The position numbers were made by a program, and so were the translations under genes. Shown one piece after another: positions 8,991 to 57,830 of a DNA stretch of 64,000 nucleotides; within the stretch, counting starts at the first letter, position 1, and every line of letters begins with the position of its first letter. The notes under the pieces are model-generated. The model was given only the letters and a program-made list of their open reading frames with translations, was not told the origin of the DNA and ran no database searches. Source of the stretch: Chrysemys picta bellii. Its lineage: Eukaryota. The stretch covers positions 88,784,001 to 88,848,000 of the forward strand of contig NC_088791.1 in the NCBI RefSeq assembly GCF_011386835.1, in the 5' to 3' direction.

Positions 8991-9518
8991 CAGATTAAAA
9001 TTAAAAGAGTGTTAAGGCTGCATTTTAGTTAGGTTTTTAACCCTGGTGTGATAATATATCTGTTTCTGTCTGTAGCTAGAGCGGATAGATTGCTAATACT
9101 AATTAAGTATCAAAACAGGAATGCCATCTCCAAAGCCAGCTATATTTGCATGGTTACATTCAACTCCGATACTGCCTCTACTAGATTATATCCTTAAGGA
9201 AACATAGGTCTCCATGAAGGCCTTGGATCCCAGTCATTAAAATAACAGAATGTATCTGATCATTACTTTGGAAGAATGTATAATACCATCTGGAGGAATA
9301 CATGCACATATATATCTGTATATATTTATTATATAGCTATATTATATACAATGGCATGCATATATACATCATATATTAATTGCACATTACACAGGAGGGA
9401 AACATTTATGTTAAAGGAAGTTAAGGTTACAAAGTCAAGCACTCAAAATTAGTAAATGACAGTACTGTTTGCCCATGAAACCCTAATTTGTTCCTTTTGT
9501 GTGCATTATTTATGATAC

Positions 9519-29938: not shown

Positions 29939-30890
29939 GGGCCTTGTCTACACTGGCAAGTTTCTGCTCAGTAAAGCAGCTTTCTGCATTGTAACTCCCG
30001 AGGTGTACACACTGCCAAGCCAATTAGTGCGCAGAAACTGCGCAGTTGCAGCGCTGGGAAAAAAAACACCCCAACGAGAGGTGTACAGCTTTCTGAGCCA
30101 GGGCTACAGCGTCGCGGTGCCAGTGTAGACACCCTGGTAGTTTACAGTGCTGTGATTGACCTCTGGGAGGTGTCCCACAATACCTGTTCTCACCTCTCTG
30201 GTTATTGGTTTGAACTCTACTGCCCTGCCCTCAGGTGACCAACCGTGAGTCCCACCCCTTAAATTCCTTGGGGAATTTTGAAAGTCCCCTTCCTGTTTGC
30301 TCAGTGACACATGCAGTGGTCTCAGCGCATCTTTCCAGGTGACCATGCCTGCTAAACACACCAGGCTATCCCCTCCTTGGAGCAATGCCAAACTACTGGA
30401 CCTCATCAGCATTTGGGGAAAGGAGGATGTCCAGGCCCAGCTCCGCTCCATCTGTAGGAATTATGATATCTACAGACAGATTTCACAATGCATAACAGAA
30501 AGGGGACATGACCAGGACACACTGCAGTGCAGGCACAAAGTGAAGGAGCTGTGGAATGCCTACCACAAGGCGCTGGAGGCAAACCGCCGCTCTGGTGCTG
30601 CACCCACGAGCTGCCAGTTCTACAAAGAGCTGGACACGACACTCAGTGGCTACCCCACCTCCCCTGCAAAGGCAACTGTGGATACTTTGGTGGCTCACGT
30701 GCCAGTCAAGAATGGACCAAGTCAGAAGGAAGATATCTTGGACGAGGATGTGGAGGGGGACCCAGAGGCAGAGGACAACTTGGAGGTCAGAGATTCATGC
30801 AGCCAGGAGCTCTTCTGTACTCCGAAGAAGGCTAGCCAGTCACAGCTGTCGGATCTTGGTGAAGCGCAAACAGGAGAAGAGGACCCTGGC
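29939..30890 (+). mobile_element. PIF/Harbinger left-end fragment with Myb/SANT-like exon
   Basis: TIR GGGCCTTGTCTACACT; acceptor TTTCCAG|GTGACCATG at 30345; WS..KLLDLISIWG..GHDQDTLQCRHKVKELWNAY..CQFYKELD trihelix motif. Confidence 0.85.
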
Positions 30891-31079
30891 AAAATTCACA
30901 CCCCTAAGCGATGCAGTTAAACTGACCTAACCCCTGGTGTAGCCCAACAACCTATGGAGAGGCGGAGTACCTATGCCGATGGGAGTAGACCCTCCCTCTC
31001 ATCAGCAAAAGTAGCTTCTTGACTGAAGTGTTACAGTGGCACAACTGCACCAATGCAGCTGTGCTGCTGTAGTGTGTAA

Positions 31080-32385
31080 TAAGAATAGGCAAGCCCACAG
31101 AGAATGCAGCTGTTACTTGTACCTGCTTACTGCAGTGGTGCCAGCCAAAGTCATTGCAGAGTGGCATGGGACAATGTCCTACTGCAGAGGAAGAAATAGA
31201 AGGCAGCCATCCCTAAAAACCTTCAGGAGAGGGTTGCAGAGTATCTCCATGAAAGTTTCATTGAGATCTCTCAGATAGATAAAGAGACATCCCTGTGTGC
31301 ACAGGCAAAGTGTGCCACATACCCACCCACCTCCTGCCTACTCAGTAAGGGGAATGAAAAGCAGACGCCAACTCTACTTTTATTTCTTATCCTGCTACCT
31401 CTTCTCATACAAGCAAAACAATGAAAAATTTGTATGTTTATCTTATTAACTTGGGAATGGGCCAGTTGCCATCTTTTAAATTAAGCATAGTAAGGAAAAA
31501 TGCACAGGCACACTTACCTGAGGTCTCTTCCCCTTCATCAGGTTCATCTGTGCCAGACTGTTGGTTCTGGGTAGATTATGGTATAGTTGTGAACAGGTCC
31601 TGGGTCATGGCATGGCTGGAGCCCCCTGCCATGTCTCTCCCCTCCTCCTTGCTGTTCACATTATGACATACAGCTCATTGTAAAAGCAGCAGGTCAACGG
31701 CTCAACACCAGATCAGTTGTGCTCCCTGGCCTTGTGGTATACATGGCAGAATTCCTTTGCTTTCATGCAGCACTGCTGCTGAACCTTGTCATGTCCCTTA
31801 GCCTGCATCCTCATGTTCAGAGATATCCATGTTTCTAGGGCTGACCCATAGCTGTGCTTACATAGCCTCTTCTCCCCACAGGCATAGAAAATCCAATACT
31901 TCTTGTCTATACCAGGCAGAAGCACATCTAGTAAGTGGAGCAGGCATCTTTGGTTGGGCAGTTGCACTCAGCAAATTAGAGCTGTTAGGTTCGTGGTCAA
32001 GGTGTGCAATCAGGAAAAGGCATTTCAAAAATACATGGCAGGTGGGTTTATGTGGTTGGGGATGGGGATTTCCCATTTCTGACCCCTGGGCAGTGGAGTT
32101 AAAAATAGTGACCAGAGAGCCATCACTGTCTCAGGGAATTGGGCATTGTGGGACAGCTGCTGGAGGATTGTTAGGGTCAACACACATCATGCAGTGTCTA
32201 CACTTGGGAACTGGTCAACTTCAATAGGTCAACCAGGATTCATGCTGTTAAGGGGAATTGGTTGACTGTGTTGCCATAGCACAGTGTTTATGTTGCCCAG
32301 AGACAAATTTGAGTGTAGACACATGCACAAATAGGTTGACTCAAGGTGATTTATGGTGAGCTAAATTTGTAGAGTAGATCAGGCC
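31080..32385 (-). mobile_element. Second, divergent PIF/Harbinger left-end fragment, decayed
   Basis: Diverged TIR at 32385, decayed Myb-like exon at about 31520-31970 (GHDKVQQQCCMKAKEFCHVYHKAREHN), donor CAG|GTAAGT near 31518. Confidence 0.75.
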
Positions 32386-34789: not shown

Positions 34790-35191
<402 letters not shown>

Positions 35192-35570: not shown

Positions 35571-36021
35571 ATGCCTAAGCCATCGAAATCTGCTCCTGCT
35601 CCTAAGAAAAGTTGTAAAAAAGCTTACCAGACCCACTAAATCGACCTTCTAAAAATGTTAATGTATTACTGACAGGTGAAACCTTAAATTAGAGTGAATA
35701 AATGAAGACTCGACACACCAGTTCTGAAAGGTTGCCGACCCCTGACTTAGAAGAAGGGCGATAAGTGGGAAAAGACGAGGAGAGAAAGTTCCTCCGTTTA
35801 CCTGTATAAAGTATTCAAGCAGGTTCACCCACACACCAGCATCTCCTCCAATGCTATGGGTATAATGAACTCTTTTGTAAATGACATCTTTGAGCCTATC
35901 GCTGGAGAAGCGTTTCGTCTGGCACATTACAACAAGCGCTCAACCATCACTTCCAGGGAGATCCAGACCGCTGTAAGAGTCTGTTGCTGTGAGGCGAGCT
36001 GGCCAAACATACTGTTTCTGA
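35571..36021 (+). pseudogene. H2B: Histone H2B pseudogene disrupted by two insertions
   Basis: [13 protein letters not shown], then insert 35632-35744, then ..[25 protein letters not shown]..; frameshift; 3' end replaced by a MITE; octamer lost. Confidence 0.93.
35632..35744 (+). mobile_element. hAT-type DNA transposon end fragment
   Basis: Ends in AGGTTGCCGACCCCTG (reverse complement CAGGGGTCGGCAACCT, Charlie-like TIR); interrupts the H2B N-tail. Confidence 0.6.
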
Positions 36022-36756: not shown

Positions 36757-38016
36757 TAAGAGCCATCCACCTTCTCATTCATCGAGCAGAACATCACTTA
36801 CTACTATCGACTGTGTTTTTCAAACTGCATCTAGTGGCTTGCAAGTAAATAATTCATTATCATAATTAATAATACACAGTGAGGAAGCTTTACAAAACTC
36901 TAGTCTCAGGCAAGTTGTCTGTAAATTTCTTTATTCCCACACCATATCTAGAGAGAGAGAAAGCCTGATTTCTCTTTGCTACCAGTAAATAAGCACTTGA
37001 AGTGTCATAATATTCTAGAAGATATAGGTTTCTTATCTATTGTATAAAATGGTTAATATCCCCACACTGCTGTAATGAAGGTATGATTAAACTGGTATTC
37101 ACCTAACATTAATTCAACATATCAGAATCACGCTTATAGAAAGCAAATTTAAACTGTTGCAATCTCACTGGGTTTACTAACTAAAAATCTTAGATACTAT
37201 AACCCAAATCTCTTGTTTCTCCCCATCCTCCCTCTGTCCCTGAAGAGAGTCCTTAGAGAGTGCAGCTGCATAAAATCAACTCATTTCTTACATCAAGTAA
37301 TTTCCCTATTTTCTTCTGTATTTTCAAAGCAGTTTTTTTTCACTTAGCCATAAACTTATTTAATTTCTGAACATGTTTGTGAAATTGGGGGCGGGGGGAG
37401 GTATCTGTTCTGAGGAACTTTCAATAAGGTGGAATTTAAAACAAAATATGCACAGGAACCAGGATTAAATCTGATTACGGAATCACATTGACACAATTAT
37501 TCTTTCTATTAGTTTATAGTATGAAACCCTTTAAATTACTAAATCTCCAGGATGCTAACCTATTTATCTGCCATGTGCAGAGAAGTTTTGTTACCTTTAA
37601 GTATCTATGGCCTTGGCTACACTTGTGAGTTGCAGCGCTGTAAAGCCACCCCCAGCGCTGTAACTCACTCCCCGTCCACACTGGCAAGGCATTTGCAGTG
37701 CTGTATCTCCTTGGTTGCAGCGCTGCATGTACTCCACCTCTCCGAGAGGAATAGCGAGTGCAGCGCTGCCGCTGCAGCGCTGCGGCGCCAGTGTGGCCAC
37801 CCAATGCGCTGTGAATGGCCTTCAGAATTATTCGGCAGTATCCCACAATGCCTATTCTAGCCACTCTGGTCATCAGTTTAAACTCTACTGCCCTGGCCTC
37901 AGGTAACCAACCATGTGACCGACCCTTTACATTCCCCAGGAATTTTAAAAATCCCCTTCCTGTTTGCTCAGCCCAGCGCGGCGTGGAGTGCTATCAGCGA
38001 ATCTTTCCAGGTGACC

Positions 38017-39787
38017 ATGCCTCCACGCGCCAAGCAAGCCCCAGCATGGAGCAATGGCAAGTTGCTGGACCACATCAGTGTTTGGGGGGAGGAAGCTGTC
38101 CAGTCCCAGCTACGCTCCAGCCGTAGGAATTCCGATACCTTCAGGAAGGTATCAAAGGACATGATGGAAAGGGGCCATGACCGGGACACCCTGCAGTGCA
38201 GGATTAAAGTCAAGGAGCTGCGGAGTGTCTACCGCAAAGCCCGCGACGCAAACGGCCGCTCGGGTGCTCCCCCCGCGACGTGCAGATTCTACAAGGAGCT
38301 GGATGCGATACTTGGGGTTAACCCCACCTCCACTCTGAGCACCACCATGGACACTTCAGAGCCGGTGGGGGGAGGGGGGAGGAAGAGGAGGAGGCGAAGG
38401 AGGAGGATGAAAACGGGAGTGATGGTGGTGGGCCAGATGGAGACACCCTGGAATCCCTGGAGCCATGCAGCCAGGAGCTCTTCTCGAGCCAGGAGGATGG
38501 TAGCCAGTCACAGTGGTTGGTACTTGGTGGAGGACAAACAGAAGAGCAGGTTCCCGGTAAGCGGGTTTTTTTTTTCGGGAAGGAATTTTTTTGGTGCGGG
38601 CTCTTTGGGAGAGGAGGGTTAGGCATGCATGCCTAGATGCGGAATAGTGCGTTGATGTGGTTTATCACATCGTGGTAATCGGCCTCGGTAATCCCCTCAA
38701 ATGTCTCATCCAGAACGTGTGCAATGCGCTTGCGCAGGTTTATAGGGAGAGCCACCGTGGTCCTTGTCCCAGCCAGGCTAACGTGTCCACAACACTGTGC
38801 CGCGAGGGGTGGGGGGACCATTGCTGCACACAGGCAAGCTGCATATGGGCCAGGGCAGAAGCCGCATTGCAGTAGAAGACCCTCCCTTGCTTCCCAGGTC
38901 ACCCTCAGCAGTGAGATATCGTCCAGGACGAACTCCTGTGGAAAATGTTGGGACAGTGTTCAGTGTAGGTGCCCCTTGAAGCTGTTGGCTCTCCCCAAGG
39001 CACAGAAACGCAGAGGACAGTGCAGCCCTGAAACAATCAGTCCCCATTACTCACCATTTTGAGGCTCCCGTGGGATATGTGTGCTCTGTTTTGGACGGGA
39101 AAATTATGCTATTGTGTAGACCCTGTGTGTTTTATACTCCTTAAGTGCGGGGGGAATCATTACTCTGTCTGGTATAAACAATGCTGCCTCTGTTAAATGT
39201 TGCATTTTGCCTATACAGCTGCATCAAACTTGAGACCTCAGCCATCCCTCTTATCACCTGCTCAGAGACTGCAAAGACTCAGGAAGAGACCGCAAAAAAG
39301 CAAAGAAGACATGCTCCAAGAAGTGATGCGGCAATCTATTAAAGAGAATGAGAAAGCACAGAACTGGAGGGAGATAGAAAGCAGGATCCACCAGGAAAAC
39401 GCAGCGCACTGGTGGCAAAGCACTGTGCACCGGCAGCAAAGCACTGATAGGCTCATCAGTATCCTGGAGCGCCAAGCAGATACTATCCAGGAGGTGGTAG
39501 CCATGCAGAAAGAGGAGCAGTACCGAAAACGCAAACGCCACCCACCACTACAGCCCTTGTCCCAAAACTCTGTCCGTTGTGCCCCACTGTCACCTCCAAC
39601 CCACTTTCCCCAACTTACGTGTTCTTCACGCCACCCGCTGCCTCCAACACCAGTATCTTCACCACCCAACCCTGAAGACCACGACCCTTACCCTCTGCAC
39701 TCAACCCCCATCACCATGCAGTATAGCTGCCCTGAAGTGCAGCACTCACTGCACAGCACACCAGACAGGACATACACGAATCTGTGA
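38017..39787 (+). CDS. Harbinger Myb/SANT-like DNA-binding protein, spliced, one frameshift
   Basis: Exon 38017-38556, phase-1 GT-AG intron 38557-39218, exon 39219-39787; one base missing in the G-run near 38365-38380; restoring it gives 369 aa. Confidence 0.8.
38633..39057 (-). CDS. Putative third Harbinger gene (101 aa), antisense, nested in the Myb intron
   Basis: AAAATG|GTGAGT donor (ATG 39057-39055), 119-nt intron, TTTTCCACAG|GAG acceptor at 38936/38935, open to TAG at 38633; homologous frame at 31132-31280. Confidence 0.6.
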
Positions 39788-40014
39788 TTGCACTGTTCCC
39801 CACTCCACCCCCTTGTTTCTTTTCAATAAATATATTTTTTTTTATCAATAAATGGATTATTCGGCTTTGAAAACATTCTTTATTATTGCATAAAGTAAAA
39901 GACTCCTTAGCCCAGGAAATAAACAGGCACCGCAAGTCTGCTTGTCTGCTAAGCAGACACTGATTCCTAAAGATTGGAACTACTGCACTTCACTCCCGTG
40001 CAGGGCACCAGATA

Positions 40015-41267
40015 TCACTGCTGGTTTTCAGCCTCAAATTGCTCCCCAAAGGCATCCCTAATCCTTGCAGCCCCACACTGGTCCCCTGTAATAGCCCTGC
40101 TCTCTGGCTGTGCAAATTCAGCCTCCAGGTGTTCAACCTCGGAGGTCCATGCCTGAGTGAAGCTTTCACCCCTCCCTTCACAAATATTATTGAGGGCACA
40201 GCACGCGGATATAACCGCGGGGATGCTGCTTTCGGCCAAGTCCAGCTTCCCATACAGAGATCGCCAGCGGGCCTTTAAACGGCCAAAGGCACACTCCACA
40301 GTCATTCGGCACCGGCTCAGCCTGTAGTTGAACCGTTCCTTGCTGCTATCAAGGCTCCCTGTGTAGGGTTTCATGAGCCACGGCATTAATGGGTAAGCGG
40401 GATCTCCAAGGATCACAATGGGCATTTCAACTTCCCCTACCGTGATCTTCCTCTCTGGGAAAAAAGTCCCGGCCTGCATCTTCCTGAACAGCCAAGTGTT
40501 CCGAAAGATGCGTGCGTCATGCACCTTTCCGGGCCAGCCTGTGTTAATGTCAATGAAACACCCACGGTGATCCTCAAGTGCCTGGAGAACCATAGAGAAA
40601 TACCCCTTCCGATTAACGTACTCGGATCCTAGGTGGGGTGGTGCCAATATAGGAATGTGCGTCCCATCTATTGCCCCTCCACAGTAGGGAACCCCATTTT
40701 TGCAAAGCCATCCACTATGTCCTGCACGTTACCCAGAGTCACGGTTCTTCTGAGTAGGATGCGATTAATGGCCTTGCAAACTTCCATCAACACGATTCCA
40801 ACGGTTGACTTTCCCACTCCAAACTGGTTTGCGACCGACCGGTAGCTGTCTGGAGTTGCCAGCTTCCATACTGCAATAGCCACCCGCTTCTCCACTGGCA
40901 GGGCAGCTCTCAATCTCGTGTCCTTGCGCCGCAGGGTGGGGGCAAGCTCCTCACACAGTCCCATGAAAGTGGCTTTTCTCGTCCGAAAGTTCTGCAACCA
41001 CTGCTCGTCATCCCAGACTTCCATGACGATGTGATCCCACCACTCAGAGCTTGTTTCCCGAACCCAAAAGCGGCGTTCCACGGTGCTGAGCATGTCCGTG
41101 AATTCCACAAGCAATTTCGTGTCATATGCGTTACGTGTCTTGATAGCATCATCGGAATCCTCACCCTCACTAACACTGTCACTTTGGATCTTAAGGAATA
41201 GTTCGATAGCCAAACATGAAGTGCTGGCGAGACTCATCAGCATACGCCTCAGCAGTTCGGACTCCAT
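40015..41267 (-). CDS. Harbinger (HARBI1-like) DDE transposase, one frameshift
   Basis: NFR..F..LCEEL, VEKRVAIAVWKLAT, GFP/AIDGTH, GKVHDAR, LGDPAY and VECAFGRLKARW motifs; 1-bp deletion near 40685; restored length 417 aa. Confidence 0.9.
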
Positions 41268-41898
41268 TTCCCGTAGACAGATTTCGCTGCACAGAAACCG
41301 TTGAAAGATGGCGCCAAAGGTGGATGGAAACAAAGGGATTTCTAAGATGCGAAGCGATGCATCACGGGGCATTGGAACAGGACCCAGAATCCCCCGCACC
41401 CACGCCCCCTTCCCACAACCCATGGCGCCAGAATGGGAAAAGGTGCTCTGTGAGATAGCTGCCCATAATGCACCGCTCCCAATAGCGCTGAAATTGCCGC
41501 AAATGTGGCCACAATAGTGTGCTGGGCAGCTGTCAGTGTGGACAGACTGCAGCGCTCTCCCTACTCAGCTGCACGAAGTCAGGTTTAACTCACAGCGCTG
41601 TACATCTGCAAGTGTAGCCAAGGCCTCAGATTTTAGAATTTAAGGATGGAGGGAAAGAGAGTACTGTAAACAGATCTTCCAGGAGCTGTGTGTGCCACTC
41701 AGTCCAAGGGGAAGAACTGTAGGATATAACTATCTTAAAATATGCAAATTAAAACAAAATTAAATGAGAAGGGATTTTTCTATGCATTCAAATCCTGTAC
41801 TTGATTACCCTCCCATTCGCCAGGAATTGGGGTTCATTATTAGGATGACCAGATACTCAACTATGAAAAAAAGCGAAAGTGTGGAGGGGAGGGGAGGG

Positions 41899-43093: not shown

Positions 43094-43579
<486 letters not shown>

Positions 43580-56359: not shown

Positions 56360-57830
56360 GGCCTTGTCTACACTACAAAGTTTTGCCAACGCAAGTTATG
56401 CCAACATACAGCCACCACTGTAATTAAACGGCAGTTGCATGTCCACACTATGCTCCTTGTGTCAGTGGAGCGCATACACAATAGCAGCTCTTGCATTGAG
56501 ACAGAGCAGTGCACTGTGGATAGCTTTGGGAAGTGTTTGCAATGCCTCATGGGGGGAGGTACAGTGTCATATGATGAAAGTTTCTAAATCCCATCATTCC
56601 ATGGGCATTGTACTAGATTGCCAACTGCTTTTCAACTGCTTTGGTAACCTGCAACCCAGCCATCTCTGTCACAAAGCATGGATCCTGCACTGCTCTTCAG
56701 TATTGTGTTGTGCATTATGACTACAAGGCTATAAGAGGAGCCCAATGGGAAGCTATTCAGCTGGGGATGCCTTGAAGGAGCATGATAACACTGAGCCACA
56801 ATAATGTGTGTTGCTATAATGTGCTGAGCCTGGCATTGTTTGTCTGCACCGTGCTATGAACCTTATAATGATTGCTGTGTGTGCCTGAAAAGTAACACAT
56901 TTTAAATCATTTTTTTAAAGTAGCACTTGGTAATATGACCAAACTGACATTGCTGAACACTAACACAAGAAGCCCACAGTGTGTTGGGGGAGTGTGTGAG
57001 AGATTCTGTGGGGGGAAGGAGAGAGTAAGTGAGAGAGAGACAGAGTATTTGTTGGGGAAGTGTGTGTGTGTGGGCAAGCTATCTCTTTAACAGGCAGCAG
57101 CCGGAAGTAAACAATCCTGAGGAAGAAGCTGGTGCACAGACAGCTGGTGCCCCCCTGTCCCTCTATCCCAGCTCAGCGGAGACCAGTACACCAGCGGGAA
57201 CACCCCAACATCAGCCCCCAACTCAATCCCTGGCTCTGCACAGCACAGCACAAGTCTCTTCCTTTCCCTCCTCACAGCAGCAGCCCCCCTCGCCTGCCTG
57301 CCACTGTGGTCCTAGTGCTGGAGAGAGCAGGATTCCGCATTAATGTTTTGATTCCGTGATTCCCTCCGAGTTCTCCCACAGCCTCCTCTCCTCACAGACC
57401 AAGGAGACCCACCCGCTCTCTGTAGTCCAGGCAGAAGTGCATTTGCTGCCACCGAGCCGGCATGCTCAGTTGGGAAGTAGCTATGCAAGTTCTCCATGCT
57501 GAGCAGTTTCAAAACTTTCTGAGGCTTTGAAAGGACAGGGGTGCATGCCAGTGTAGCTGGATGCAGGGCAGTGGAGTTCAAAACAGTTGAGCTGAGCGGT
57601 CACGGTGGGCATTGTGGGATACCTCCCAGAGGCCAGTTACAGTGACACTGACACTTTGTCGATCTAACTTTGCTGCATAAAGCTCTACACGTCTTGTCAA
57701 GGTGGTTTTATTTTGTCAGCGAAGCAGGAAAGTTTTGTCGGAAGGAGGAGTGTTGTAGTGTGTACACCTCCACTGTTTTGTTGAAAAAAGCTGTCTTTTG
57801 TCAACCAAACTGCGTATTATAGACAAGTCC
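56360..57830. mobile_element. Internally deleted non-autonomous Harbinger
   Basis: TAA then TIR GGCCTTGTCTACACT; diverged right TIR; decayed transposase 5' region near 56680-56900; left-end-type subterminal sequence at 57450-57830. Confidence 0.7.

What the first reader, a model, noticed from the sequence alone, without database searches (positions are those of the whole stretch)
38633..39085. Candidate third gene of a vertebrate Harbinger transposon: spliced, antisense, nested in the Myb-gene intron
Seen: inside the 662-bp Myb intron, the minus strand has AAAATG|GTGAGT (ATG at 39057), a 119-nt GT-AG intron ending TTTTCCACAG, and a 303-nt phase-0 exon open to TAG at 38633. Splicing creates a strong Kozak context (aaaATGg) and a 101-aa protein: MEFVLDDISLLRVTWEAREGLLLQCGFCPGPYAACLCAAMVPPPLAAQCCGHVSLAGTRTTVALPINLRKRIAHVLDETFEGITEADYHDVINHINALFRI. 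A further acceptor (..AAAACAG| at 39086) would make the ATG exon 31 nt. Established: the usual PIF/Harbinger model has two genes, a DDE transposase and a Myb/SANT-like protein. Inference: this is a third functional product, possibly spliced from the transposase leader as a regulator or anti-silencing factor. I do not recognise the domain and cannot confirm it is undescribed.
Basis: partly seen in the sequence, partly recalled or inferred. Interest (0 to 1): 0.82.

Follow-up and report, generated by a model that had tools for sequence, protein, structure and literature searches.

The report
BEN-domain third gene in Harbinger transposon
The reading frame is real and conserved: turtle Harbinger transposons carry an extra exon for a small BEN-type DNA-binding domain, antisense inside the intron of their Myb gene, though the copy in this window is decayed.

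Summary
The open frame alone means nothing, because 47% of shuffled introns contain an equally long one. Comparison with other copies makes the case. Homologous exons lie at the same place and on the same strand, downstream of the transposase and antisense in the Myb intron, in at least four diverged turtle Harbinger lineages. Two of those elements have their own TIRs. Between lineages, nucleotide similarity is gone, yet the proteins align without gaps at 41-53% identity. pN/pS is 0.44-0.67 with every confidence interval below 1, and no other frame scores comparably. A 97-sequence alignment gives a confident AlphaFold model (pLDDT 88) whose top structural matches are all BEN domains. What is unresolved is the 5' end. 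The ATG|GTGAGT mini-exon is conserved only within this family, the extra acceptor at 39086 is not conserved, and RefSeq models elsewhere join the transposase N-terminus to the exon. The window copy is dead: transposase and Myb are frameshifted, and a near-invariant Trp of the BEN domain is lost. I found no prior description.

The parts
37609..37625 (+). Left terminal inverted repeat of the Harbinger element (GGCCTTGGCTACACTTG)
   Evidence: It is perfectly complementary over 17 nt to 41609-41625. It is homologous to the GGGCATGGCTACAC termini of six other copies, which are flanked by TAA or TTA.
38017..38556 (+). Myb/SANT-like gene, exon 1; frameshifted in this copy near 38365-38385
   Evidence: Pfam Myb_DNA-bind_4, E=7.6e-16. 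The Myb domain is in frame 0, while the acidic tail ...SQELFSS...EEQVPG is in frame 2, which is the frame that fits the phase-1 splice to exon 2.
38557..39218 (+). Myb-gene intron (662 nt), which hosts the candidate on the opposite strand
   Evidence: Donor CCCG|GTAAGC and acceptor TATACAG|CT. The same arrangement is seen in L007 and L010.
39055..39057 (-). Putative start codon in the context caaaATGg, followed directly by the donor GTGAGT (39054-39049)
   Evidence: ATGGTGAGT is intact in the window, L001, L002 and L003; L007 reads ATGGTAAAT; it is lost in L004 and L005. It is not conserved in the other families.
38936..39054 (-). Putative 119-nt GT-AG intron of the candidate
   Evidence: It is 131 nt long in the other family-1 copies and 87-90% identical to the window, the same level as the exon.
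38633..38935 (-). BEN-like domain exon: 100 codons plus TAG, preceded by the conserved acceptor TTTTCCACAG|G
   Evidence: Homologues were found in turtles and in 131 proteins of an exhaustive profile search. The cross-family alignment is gapless with pN/pS below 1. AlphaFold gives pLDDT 88, and the top Foldseek hits are all BEN domains. This copy has Cys where the family has a near-invariant Trp (residue 48) and Ile in place of Arg in the ALPRNL motif.
38566..38575 (-). Degenerate poly(A)-signal position about 58-69 nt after the stop; an A-run here, AATAAA in the other copies
   Evidence: The six other family-1 copies read AAAATAAAAG at this position, and family 2 has ATTAAA at a similar distance.
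39219..39787 (+). Myb-like gene, exon 2 (coiled-coil-like C-terminal part), followed by AATAAA at 39825-39830 and 39847-39852
   Evidence: ORF and translation. tblastn matches it in all other copies.
40015..41267 (-). DDE transposase gene; start ATG at 41267-41265; broken by a 1-nt deletion between 40686 and 40685; AATAAA signal at 39884-39879
   Evidence: Pfam DDE_Tnp_4, E=1.9e-29. The deletion is seen against five other copies.
41609..41625 (-). Right terminal inverted repeat
31027..31421 (+). Second, frameshifted BEN-exon remnant belonging to another decayed Harbinger copy in the window
   Evidence: An HMM built from alignment A3 hits two adjacent frames (E=3.9e-6 and 1.8e-4, profile positions 27-58 and 57-84). 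An antisense Myb exon-1 remnant lies just downstream at 31659-32031, which is the same synteny.

Best explanation
A lineage of turtle PIF/Harbinger transposons carries a third coding unit besides the DDE transposase and the Myb/SANT-like protein. It is a terminal exon of about 100 codons on the transposase strand. The exon sits downstream of the transposase gene, antisense inside the Myb gene's intron, and encodes a single BEN-fold domain. It has its own conserved 3' splice site, stop codon and poly(A) signal. In another family, annotated models instead splice the 5' part of the transposase ORF onto the same acceptor. Shown here: the position, the conservation, the purifying selection and the fold. 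Inferred: the product binds DNA sequence-specifically, as solved BEN domains do, and acts for the element, for example by binding sub-terminal or promoter sequences to regulate transcription or transposition, or by counteracting silencing. The window copy is a dead relic: transposase and Myb are both frameshifted and the BEN domain has lost a near-invariant Trp.
For: Eight turtle proteins are 68-91% identical to the candidate. Six further family-1 copies, fetched as DNA, have the exon at the same place.

Other lineages carry a homologous ORF between the transposase and the antisense Myb exon 1. These are L007 18805-19143, L010 12276-12572, L008, the decayed L007 63570-63860, and the window's own 31027-31421. 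L007 and L010 have their own 29-nt TIRs about 4.2-4.3 kb apart.

Between families, blastn finds only a 25-nt match. tblastx gives 81.7 bits (E=3e-20) in the candidate frame, against 45 bits for the next-best frame, which is its antisense shadow. The alignments are gapless over 97-99 codons at 41-53% identity. pS is 0.57-0.82, near saturation, and pN is 0.28-0.45. All cross-family bootstrap intervals of pN/pS lie below 1.

The acceptor (pyrimidine tract plus CAG|G), the stop position and an AATAAA/ATTAAA signal recur across families.

The profile search gave 131 hits. Pfam BEN is the only recurring family, at sub-threshold level in 11 of 97 members. The AlphaFold model has pLDDT 88 and pTM 0.79. 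The top 17 PDB hits are all BEN domains (BEND3, BANP, BEND6, NACC1), with TM up to 0.69. The top viral hits are poxvirus and bracovirus BEN proteins, with TM up to 0.74. The turtle sequences form one clade in a tree of the domain.
Against: I had no transcript data; expression and splicing rest on other groups' gene models, whose RNA support I could not inspect.

The start codon is not conserved between families. In L007 family 2 the ATG is in frame without an intron; it is ACG in L010; in family 3 it is 26 nt upstream and out of frame. No conserved promoter was found, and the TATAAAA upstream in the window is absent from the other copies.

Within family 1 the exon is no better conserved than its own intron (85-90% against 87-90%). 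The transposase control also looks neutral there, so that comparison cannot show selection. Three of the seven family-1 copies have frameshifts.

Pfam BEN is never reached at its curated threshold, and the Foldseek E-values are weak (at best 0.03-0.08).

A gecko host gene has the same domain as its last exon with the same boundary, so the exon may be a captured host exon.
Confidence: 0.6

Rival explanations
1. The exon is not a separate gene but an alternative 3' terminal exon of the transposase gene. The primary transcript reads through the transposase poly(A) site, and a donor in the 5' part of the transposase ORF is spliced to the CAG|G acceptor. This gives a short protein made of the transposase N-terminus plus BEN, a regulatory isoform by analogy with TnpA/TnpD of En/Spm.
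For: RefSeq isoforms of Malaclemys LOC128825970 read ...FWARETSTDWWDRIVLQ|VSTNDITLL..., which is the transposase N-terminus joined in phase 0 to the exon. Both family-2 copies have CAG|GTGTGG at that point. The universally conserved feature is the acceptor, not a start codon. The exon is on the same strand as the transposase and downstream of it.
Against: At that point family 1 (including the window) has only the weak CAA/GAA|GTCTGG, and family 3 has no GT. A conserved AATAAA ends the transposase unit about 130 nt after its stop, roughly 820 nt before the candidate's ATG. Family 1 keeps ATG|GTGAGT next to the exon. The models are predictions whose support I could not check.
Confidence: 0.3
2. 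The exon is a captured last exon of a host gene (transduplication) that merely rides along and does nothing for the element. Its splice acceptor and poly(A) signal are leftovers that now trap host transcripts.
For: In a gecko the domain is the last exon of a three-exon host gene, with no transposase or Myb within 8 kb, and the exon starts at the same place and phase. Frog ('protein Pat-like') and fish proteins carry the domain at their C-terminus. Many turtle gene models fuse unrelated host genes (TEDC1, PFKFB, a kinase, a glycine transporter) to this exon.
Against: A passenger without function should decay. Instead the frame, stop and acceptor persist in Harbinger lineages whose transposases are only about 60% identical and whose synonymous sites are saturated, with pN/pS below 1. 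The turtle element-borne sequences form one clade. Capture and later function for the element are compatible, so this rival concerns only the lack of function.
Confidence: 0.07
3. It is a chance ORF in GC-rich intron sequence with chance splice-like motifs, or the antisense shadow of coding sequence on the plus strand.
For: Open frames of this length are common: 47% of shuffled introns have one. All six frames of the region are fairly open. Within family 1, several other frames also give pN/pS of 0.6-0.8.
Against: The cross-family tblastx score is far higher in this frame than in any other. The profile search gave 131 homologues. The predicted fold is confident and matches BEN domains. In the window, the plus-strand frames across the exon carry stops.
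Confidence: 0.03

Closest known systems
Canonical two-gene PIF/Harbinger elements (DDE_Tnp_4 transposase plus Myb/SANT-like protein), e.g. as surveyed in PMC4482050 and PMC9179366
   Same: The transposase and Myb-like genes, short TIRs beginning GG, an element length of about 4 kb and convergent gene arrangement all match. Other copies are flanked by TAA or TTA.
   Different: Here a third conserved coding exon, BEN-like, lies antisense within the Myb intron. The surveys I read describe two ORFs and mention neither BEN nor a third ORF. Paper searches for 'BEN domain' with 'Harbinger' or with 'transposon' found nothing relevant.
BEN domain DNA-binding factors (BEND3, BANP, BEND6, NACC1; 'BEN-solo' proteins such as Drosophila Insensitive and Elba, from my own knowledge)
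   Same: The predicted fold superposes on solved BEN domains at TM 0.53-0.69 over about 90-100 columns, and these are the exclusive top hits. A sequence of the pattern ...G.RGK.ALP.NL...I...IN..L resembles the BEN C-terminal half, and 11 of 97 relatives have sub-threshold Pfam BEN hits.
   Different: The sequence similarity is below Pfam's threshold, and the window protein itself has no Pfam hit. The predicted product is little more than the domain, about 100 residues, and it is encoded by a transposon. DNA binding is untested.
BEN domains of poxviruses and polydnaviruses (Molluscum contagiosum virus MC036R, squirrelpox BEN protein, bracovirus BEN proteins)
   Same: These are the best matches in the viral structure library (TM 0.67-0.74, probability 0.99-1.0). 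It is another case of a BEN domain carried by a mobile or parasitic genome.
   Different: Those are large, often multi-BEN proteins of DNA viruses. There is no evidence of direct relatedness beyond the fold.
En/Spm (CACTA) TnpA/TnpD and P-element repressor isoforms: several products from one transposon transcript by alternative splicing (from my own knowledge)
   Same: If the RefSeq models that join the transposase N-terminus to BEN are real, the element makes a DNA-binding accessory product by skipping the catalytic exon sequence.
   Different: This is a different superfamily, a different domain and an unproven transcript structure. In this window's family a self-contained ATG mini-exon is the simpler reading.
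Transduplication, i.e. host exon capture by DNA transposons (Pack-MULEs, some PIF/Harbinger and CACTA elements; from my own knowledge)
   Same: The unit looks like a last exon (acceptor, coding sequence, stop, poly(A) signal), and host genes in a gecko share its boundary.
   Different: Captured fragments are usually family-specific and decay. This one is kept under constraint across diverged families.

Membership tests
PIF/Harbinger DNA transposon | DDE transposase of the DDE_Tnp_4 / PIF type | tested here: met
   Pfam PF13359, E=1.9e-29, on window 40018-40647 (minus strand). This copy is frameshifted by a 1-nt deletion.
PIF/Harbinger DNA transposon | Second gene encoding a Myb/SANT-like DNA-binding protein | tested here: met
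   Pfam PF13837, E=7.6e-16, on exon 1. The gene has two exons with a phase-1 intron and is frameshifted in this copy.
PIF/Harbinger DNA transposon | Terminal inverted repeats | tested here: met
   A perfect 17-nt TIR at 37609-37625 and 41609-41625, with 0.14 matches expected by chance.
PIF/Harbinger DNA transposon | 3-bp TWA target-site duplication | tested here: inconclusive
   The window flanks are TAT and TCA, which are not a duplication as they stand. Other copies of the family are flanked by TAA or TTA on the side visible in the alignment.
BEN domain (Pfam PF10523) | Sequence match to the family model at its curated threshold | tested here: not met
   No Pfam hit for the window protein or its close relatives. 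In 11 of 97 family members there are sub-threshold BEN hits, best E=0.0016, and one full-length relative scores E=4.7e-4, 20.8 bits against a cut-off of 23.2.
BEN domain (Pfam PF10523) | BEN fold: a helical bundle that superposes on solved BEN domains | tested here: met
   The model has pLDDT 88 and pTM 0.79, with five helices and a short hairpin. The top 17 PDB hits are all BEN domains, TM up to 0.69/0.63 and probability up to 1.0. The top viral hits are also BEN proteins. The Foldseek E-values themselves are weak (0.03-0.08 or worse).
BEN domain (Pfam PF10523) | Sequence-specific DNA binding | not testable with these tools
   This needs EMSA, SELEX or a similar assay with the purified domain.
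Functional protein-coding gene of the element | ORF kept at the same place in diverged element lineages, with fewer non-synonymous than synonymous changes | tested here: met
   gapless alignments at 41-53% identity, cross-family pN/pS 0.44-0.67, and all bootstrap intervals below 1.
Functional protein-coding gene of the element | Conserved start codon and promoter | tested here: inconclusive
   ATG|GTGAGT is kept within family 1 only. The other families differ. No conserved TATA box was found.
Functional protein-coding gene of the element | Transcription and use of the splice sites | not testable with these tools
   The only evidence is third-party gene models that use the acceptor: RefSeq XP_053865786.1 and XP_053864860.1, among others. 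No read data were available.
Transduplicated host exon | Same exon, with the same boundary, in a host gene outside any element | tested here: met
   In gecko locus L011 the domain is the last exon of a three-exon gene, and no transposase or Myb was found within 8 kb. The acceptor is at the homologous position in L009. The direction of transfer was not determined.

The most novel reading that the evidence does not exclude
The Harbinger-borne BEN exon is a portable 'acceptor, DNA-binding domain, stop, poly(A)' cassette. Besides serving the transposon, it is repeatedly spliced onto host genes wherever the element lands in an intron. The lineage-specific BEN-like host genes of squamates, frogs ('Pat-like') and fish would then descend from such events, making Harbinger elements a source of new BEN-type transcription factors in vertebrates.
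Probability: 0.2. Interest if true: 0.85.

Novelty: new variant of a known kind. Interest (0 to 1): 0.68.

Why it matters
PIF/Harbinger elements are textbook two-gene transposons, and their domesticated descendants (HARBI1/NAIF1, the MSANTD genes, plant HDP1/HDP2) are interpreted in that framework. A third, selectively maintained gene for a BEN-type DNA-binding domain would add a new player to Harbinger biology, whether in regulation, end recognition or anti-silencing. Its position, antisense within another gene's intron, would also be an unusual case of gene nesting in a 4-kb DNA transposon. It would link the poorly understood vertebrate expansions of BEN-like domains to mobile elements. Its ready-made terminal-exon structure also explains a class of chimeric gene models in turtle annotations, which is of practical use for genome annotation.

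Tried and rejected
1. ORF length as evidence was rejected, because shuffled introns reach 100 codons 47% of the time.
2. Ka/Ks and codon-position counts within family 1 are uninformative. The transposase control shows no third-position excess and pN/pS of 0.6-0.7, i.e. mostly neutral decay of dead copies. The candidate frame has the lowest ratio (0.54), but two other frames are close.
3. The leader splice of P0003 was rejected as a general model. Its GT donor exists only in L001, and a CpG-decay pattern in the other copies indicates an ancestral GCG or TCG there.
4. The upstream acceptor at 39086 is not conserved.
5. Direct Pfam, PDB-sequence and profile-against-PDB searches gave no significant hit; the weak TFIIA-gamma matches are taken as spurious.
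6. The 'M' that directly abuts the domain in the Logan proteins P0021, P0023 and P0029 is at least partly an artefact of a bacterial-type gene caller: in the two contigs I read, the called start is GTG (P0021) or TTG (P0029), not an ATG.
7. Look-ups of the Xenopus and zebrafish genes for their exon structure failed, as they were not on record.
8. The second Harbinger copy at 29940-30920 is truncated after Myb exon 1, so it cannot be used to test for the exon.
9. Literature searches for a third ORF or a BEN domain in Harbinger found nothing relevant. Repbase and Dfam annotations could not be consulted.
Full report
**1. The locus**

The window is a histone-gene cluster. It carries a 4.0-kb PIF/Harbinger element at 37609-41625, bounded by a perfect 17-nt terminal inverted repeat.

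The plus strand carries a Myb/SANT-like gene (Pfam Myb_DNA-bind_4, E=7.6e-16). Its exon 1 is 38017-38556, its intron is 38557-39218 (662 nt), and its exon 2 is 39219-39787. The minus strand carries a DDE_Tnp_4 transposase at 41267-40015 (E=1.9e-29). The two genes converge, and each has an AATAAA signal in the short spacer between them.

This copy is dead. The transposase has a 1-nt deletion just before the GAIDGTH motif. Myb exon 1 changes frame in its acidic region.

**2. The observation**

There is an ATG at 39057-39055 followed directly by GTGAGT. A 119-nt intron ends in TTTTCCACAG. A 100-codon exon then runs to TAG at 38633.

On its own this is weak evidence. Of 1000 dinucleotide-preserving shuffles of the 662-nt intron, 47% contain a stop-free run of at least 100 codons. 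The protein has no Pfam hit.

**3. Other copies of the same family**

A word-indexed protein search found eight predicted turtle proteins (Chelonia, Lepidochelys, Pangshura) that are 68-91% identical. I fetched their loci. Each contains a full element about 80% identical to the window's, with the exon at the same place.

In the alignment the acceptor TTTTCC(A/G)CAG|GAG is present in all seven copies. The donor ATG|GTGAGT is intact in four copies and is GTAAAT in a fifth. Three copies carry frameshifts in the exon. These loci were found through the ORF itself, so its intactness there is biased.

Within this family the exon (85-90% identity to the window) is no better conserved than its own intron (87-90%) or the transposase (84-88%). 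The transposase shows no codon-position periodicity. The copies are therefore mostly neutral relics, and Ka/Ks within the family says little. The candidate frame gives 0.54, the transposase 0.61-0.69, and the other frames 0.61-1.24.

Neither is the donor used by the Chelonia model that joins the transposase leader to the exon. An AATAAA about 55-60 nt after the stop is present in the six other copies; in the window it has degenerated to an A-run.

**4. Other families: the decisive evidence**

The 94-kb Pangshura locus happens to contain two more, diverged Harbinger copies. A tblastn search with the candidate hit both of them.

In the first (L007 17766-21968, with its own 29-nt TIRs), a 112-codon ORF at 19143-18805 lies between the transposase (60% amino-acid identity to the window's) and the antisense Myb exon 1 (49% identity). 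It sits inside the Myb intron and on the transposase strand. It aligns to the window protein without a gap over 97 codons at 41% identity and stops two codons earlier.

At the nucleotide level blastn finds only a 25-nt match. tblastx gives 81.7 bits (E=3e-20) in the candidate frame, against 45 bits for the best other frame, which is its antisense shadow.

The same unit is present in four more places:
- a Malaclemys element of that second family (L010, TIRs at 9263 and 13594);
- a third family, seen in Logan contig L008, with the antisense Myb donor at its end;
- a decayed copy at L007 63570-63860;
- the window itself, as a frameshifted remnant at 31027-31421 next to an antisense Myb exon-1 remnant at 31659-32031.

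Across families pS is 0.57-0.82, near saturation, while pN is 0.28-0.45. pN/pS is 0.44-0.67, and every bootstrap 95% interval lies below 1. Within family 2 the ratio is 0.37 (interval 0.19-0.78). This is the signature of a protein-coding exon kept by selection while the element lineages diverged.

**5. What it encodes**

An exhaustive profile search of 1.84 billion representatives returned 131 proteins with E below 1e-3. Many are turtle gene models in which unrelated host genes (TEDC1, PFKFB, a protein kinase, a glycine transporter) end in this exon. Others come from a gecko, frogs ('protein Pat-like' of Xenopus, and Discoglossus) and fish (Danio LOC541387, Misgurnus, Acipenser).

Scanning 97 domain segments against Pfam gave one recurring family, BEN (PF10523). 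It appeared in 11 members, always below threshold.

With that alignment AlphaFold2 gave a confident model of the window protein: mean pLDDT 88, pTM 0.79, five helices and a short hairpin. Foldseek against the PDB returned solved BEN domains as all of the top 17 hits (BEND3 BEN4 and BEN3, BANP, BEND6, NACC1), with TM up to 0.69. Against viral models, the top hits were poxvirus and bracovirus BEN proteins, with TM up to 0.74.

I therefore call it a divergent BEN-fold domain. Membership by sequence threshold is not met; membership by fold is.

The window copy has Cys at the position of a Trp that is kept in at least 90% of the family, and Ile in place of Arg in the ALPRNL motif. This fits the decay of this particular copy.

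**6. How it is expressed (unresolved)**

The invariant features are the acceptor, the stop and the poly(A) signal. In other words, the unit looks like a terminal exon.

In one family-2 copy an ATG 15 codons upstream is in frame without any intron, but in the other copy it is ACG. In family 3 the ATG is 26 nt upstream and out of frame.

RefSeq models in Malaclemys use the acceptor with two different upstream exons. One uses an exon outside the element (LOC128826488). The other uses the first ~135 residues of the modelled transposase reading frame, ending ...WWDRIVLQ (LOC128825970, two isoforms). That donor, CAG|GTGTGG, exists in family 2, is weak in family 1 (CAA or GAA|GTCTGG) and is absent in family 3.

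So there are two readings: a self-contained nested gene, or an alternatively spliced product of the transposase transcript. Neither can be settled without RNA data.

**7. Origin**

In a gecko the domain is the last exon of an ordinary three-exon gene, with no Harbinger genes within 8 kb. That exon begins at the homologous position and phase. In a tree of the domain, all turtle sequences, whether element-borne or chimeric, form one clade next to the squamate sequences and apart from the fish and frog groups.

Either a Harbinger ancestor captured a host terminal exon, or host genes acquired it from elements. I could not decide the direction, because the look-ups for the frog and fish genes failed.

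**8. Known or new**

The Harbinger surveys I could read describe two ORFs and mention neither BEN nor a third ORF. Full-text searches combining 'BEN domain' with Harbinger or transposon terms found nothing relevant. Repbase and Dfam entries for turtle Harbingers could not be consulted, so an existing note there cannot be excluded.

**9. Verdict**

The domain is identified as BEN-like, its 5' structure remains open, and the window copy is a relic.

My confidence by claim:
- about 0.9 that the exon is a selectively maintained coding part of these elements;
- about 0.85 that it has a BEN fold;
- about 0.4 that the exact ATG mini-exon model is the main transcript form in this family;
- about 0.4 for a DNA-binding regulatory role serving the element.

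Noticed in passing
window 29940-30920: A second Harbinger-related copy lies in the same orientation, about 71% identical in DNA to the focal element over the TIR and Myb exon 1 (58% in protein). It appears truncated after exon 1.
   Followed up: partly
window 31027-32031: A third decayed Harbinger fragment lies in the opposite orientation. It has a frameshifted BEN-exon remnant (31027-31421, plus strand) followed by an antisense Myb exon-1 remnant (31659-32031). It abuts the copy at 29940-30920, so one element may have inserted into or beside the other.
   Followed up: partly
window 34790-35188, 35700-35980, 43094-43546 and the repeats listed: The window is a tandemly and invertedly repeated histone cluster (H2A, H3 and other units, 77-92% identical between repeats). 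The H2B-like stretch at about 35.7-35.98 kb has an upstream in-frame stop and diverges after ...REIQTAVR, so it looks like a pseudogene next to the Harbinger insertion.
   Followed up: no
window 37606-37608 and 41626-41628: The 3-bp flanks of the focal element are TAT and TCA, not an identical TWA duplication. Other copies of the family show TAA or TTA. The likely cause is mutation of an old insertion, but this was not resolved.
   Followed up: partly
window 56360-56376 and 57564-57622: There is a TIR-like match (3 mismatches) and a 59-nt, 76% match to the element's Myb 5' region on the opposite strand. These are possibly a MITE or another fragment of the same superfamily.
   Followed up: no
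proteins P0017, P0018, P0027, P0028, P0015 (turtle gene models): Annotated proteins of unrelated host genes (a kinase, TEDC1, a glycine transporter, PFKFB, a small GTPase-like protein) end in the BEN exon right at its acceptor. These are either real terminal-exon trapping by intronic Harbinger copies or systematic annotation artefacts.
   Followed up: partly
P0073 / P0140 (Xenopus laevis 'protein Pat-like'), P0045 / P0137 (Danio rerio LOC541387): Frog and fish proteins of about 440 residues carry the same BEN-like domain at their extreme C-terminus and have no Pfam annotation. The frog name points to the germ-plasm protein Pat, a possible germline link that I did not examine.
   Followed up: no
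L007 about 85150-86040 and L002/L003 upstream of the candidate ATG: The Pangshura family-1 copy has an insertion of about 900 nt in the transposase leader. L002 and L003 each have a local duplication of about 60-190 nt of the region just upstream of the ATG mini-exon; in L003 the duplicated block includes a second ATG|GTGAGT.
   Followed up: no
L010 7960-8081: The first exon of the RefSeq model LOC128826488 lies outside the element. It sits in sequence that begins GTCTAGACGCGATAAATTGATCC, which resembles the family-2 TIR region (GTCTACAC...AATCCGAAT). It is possibly a related MITE supplying a promoter or exon.
   Followed up: no
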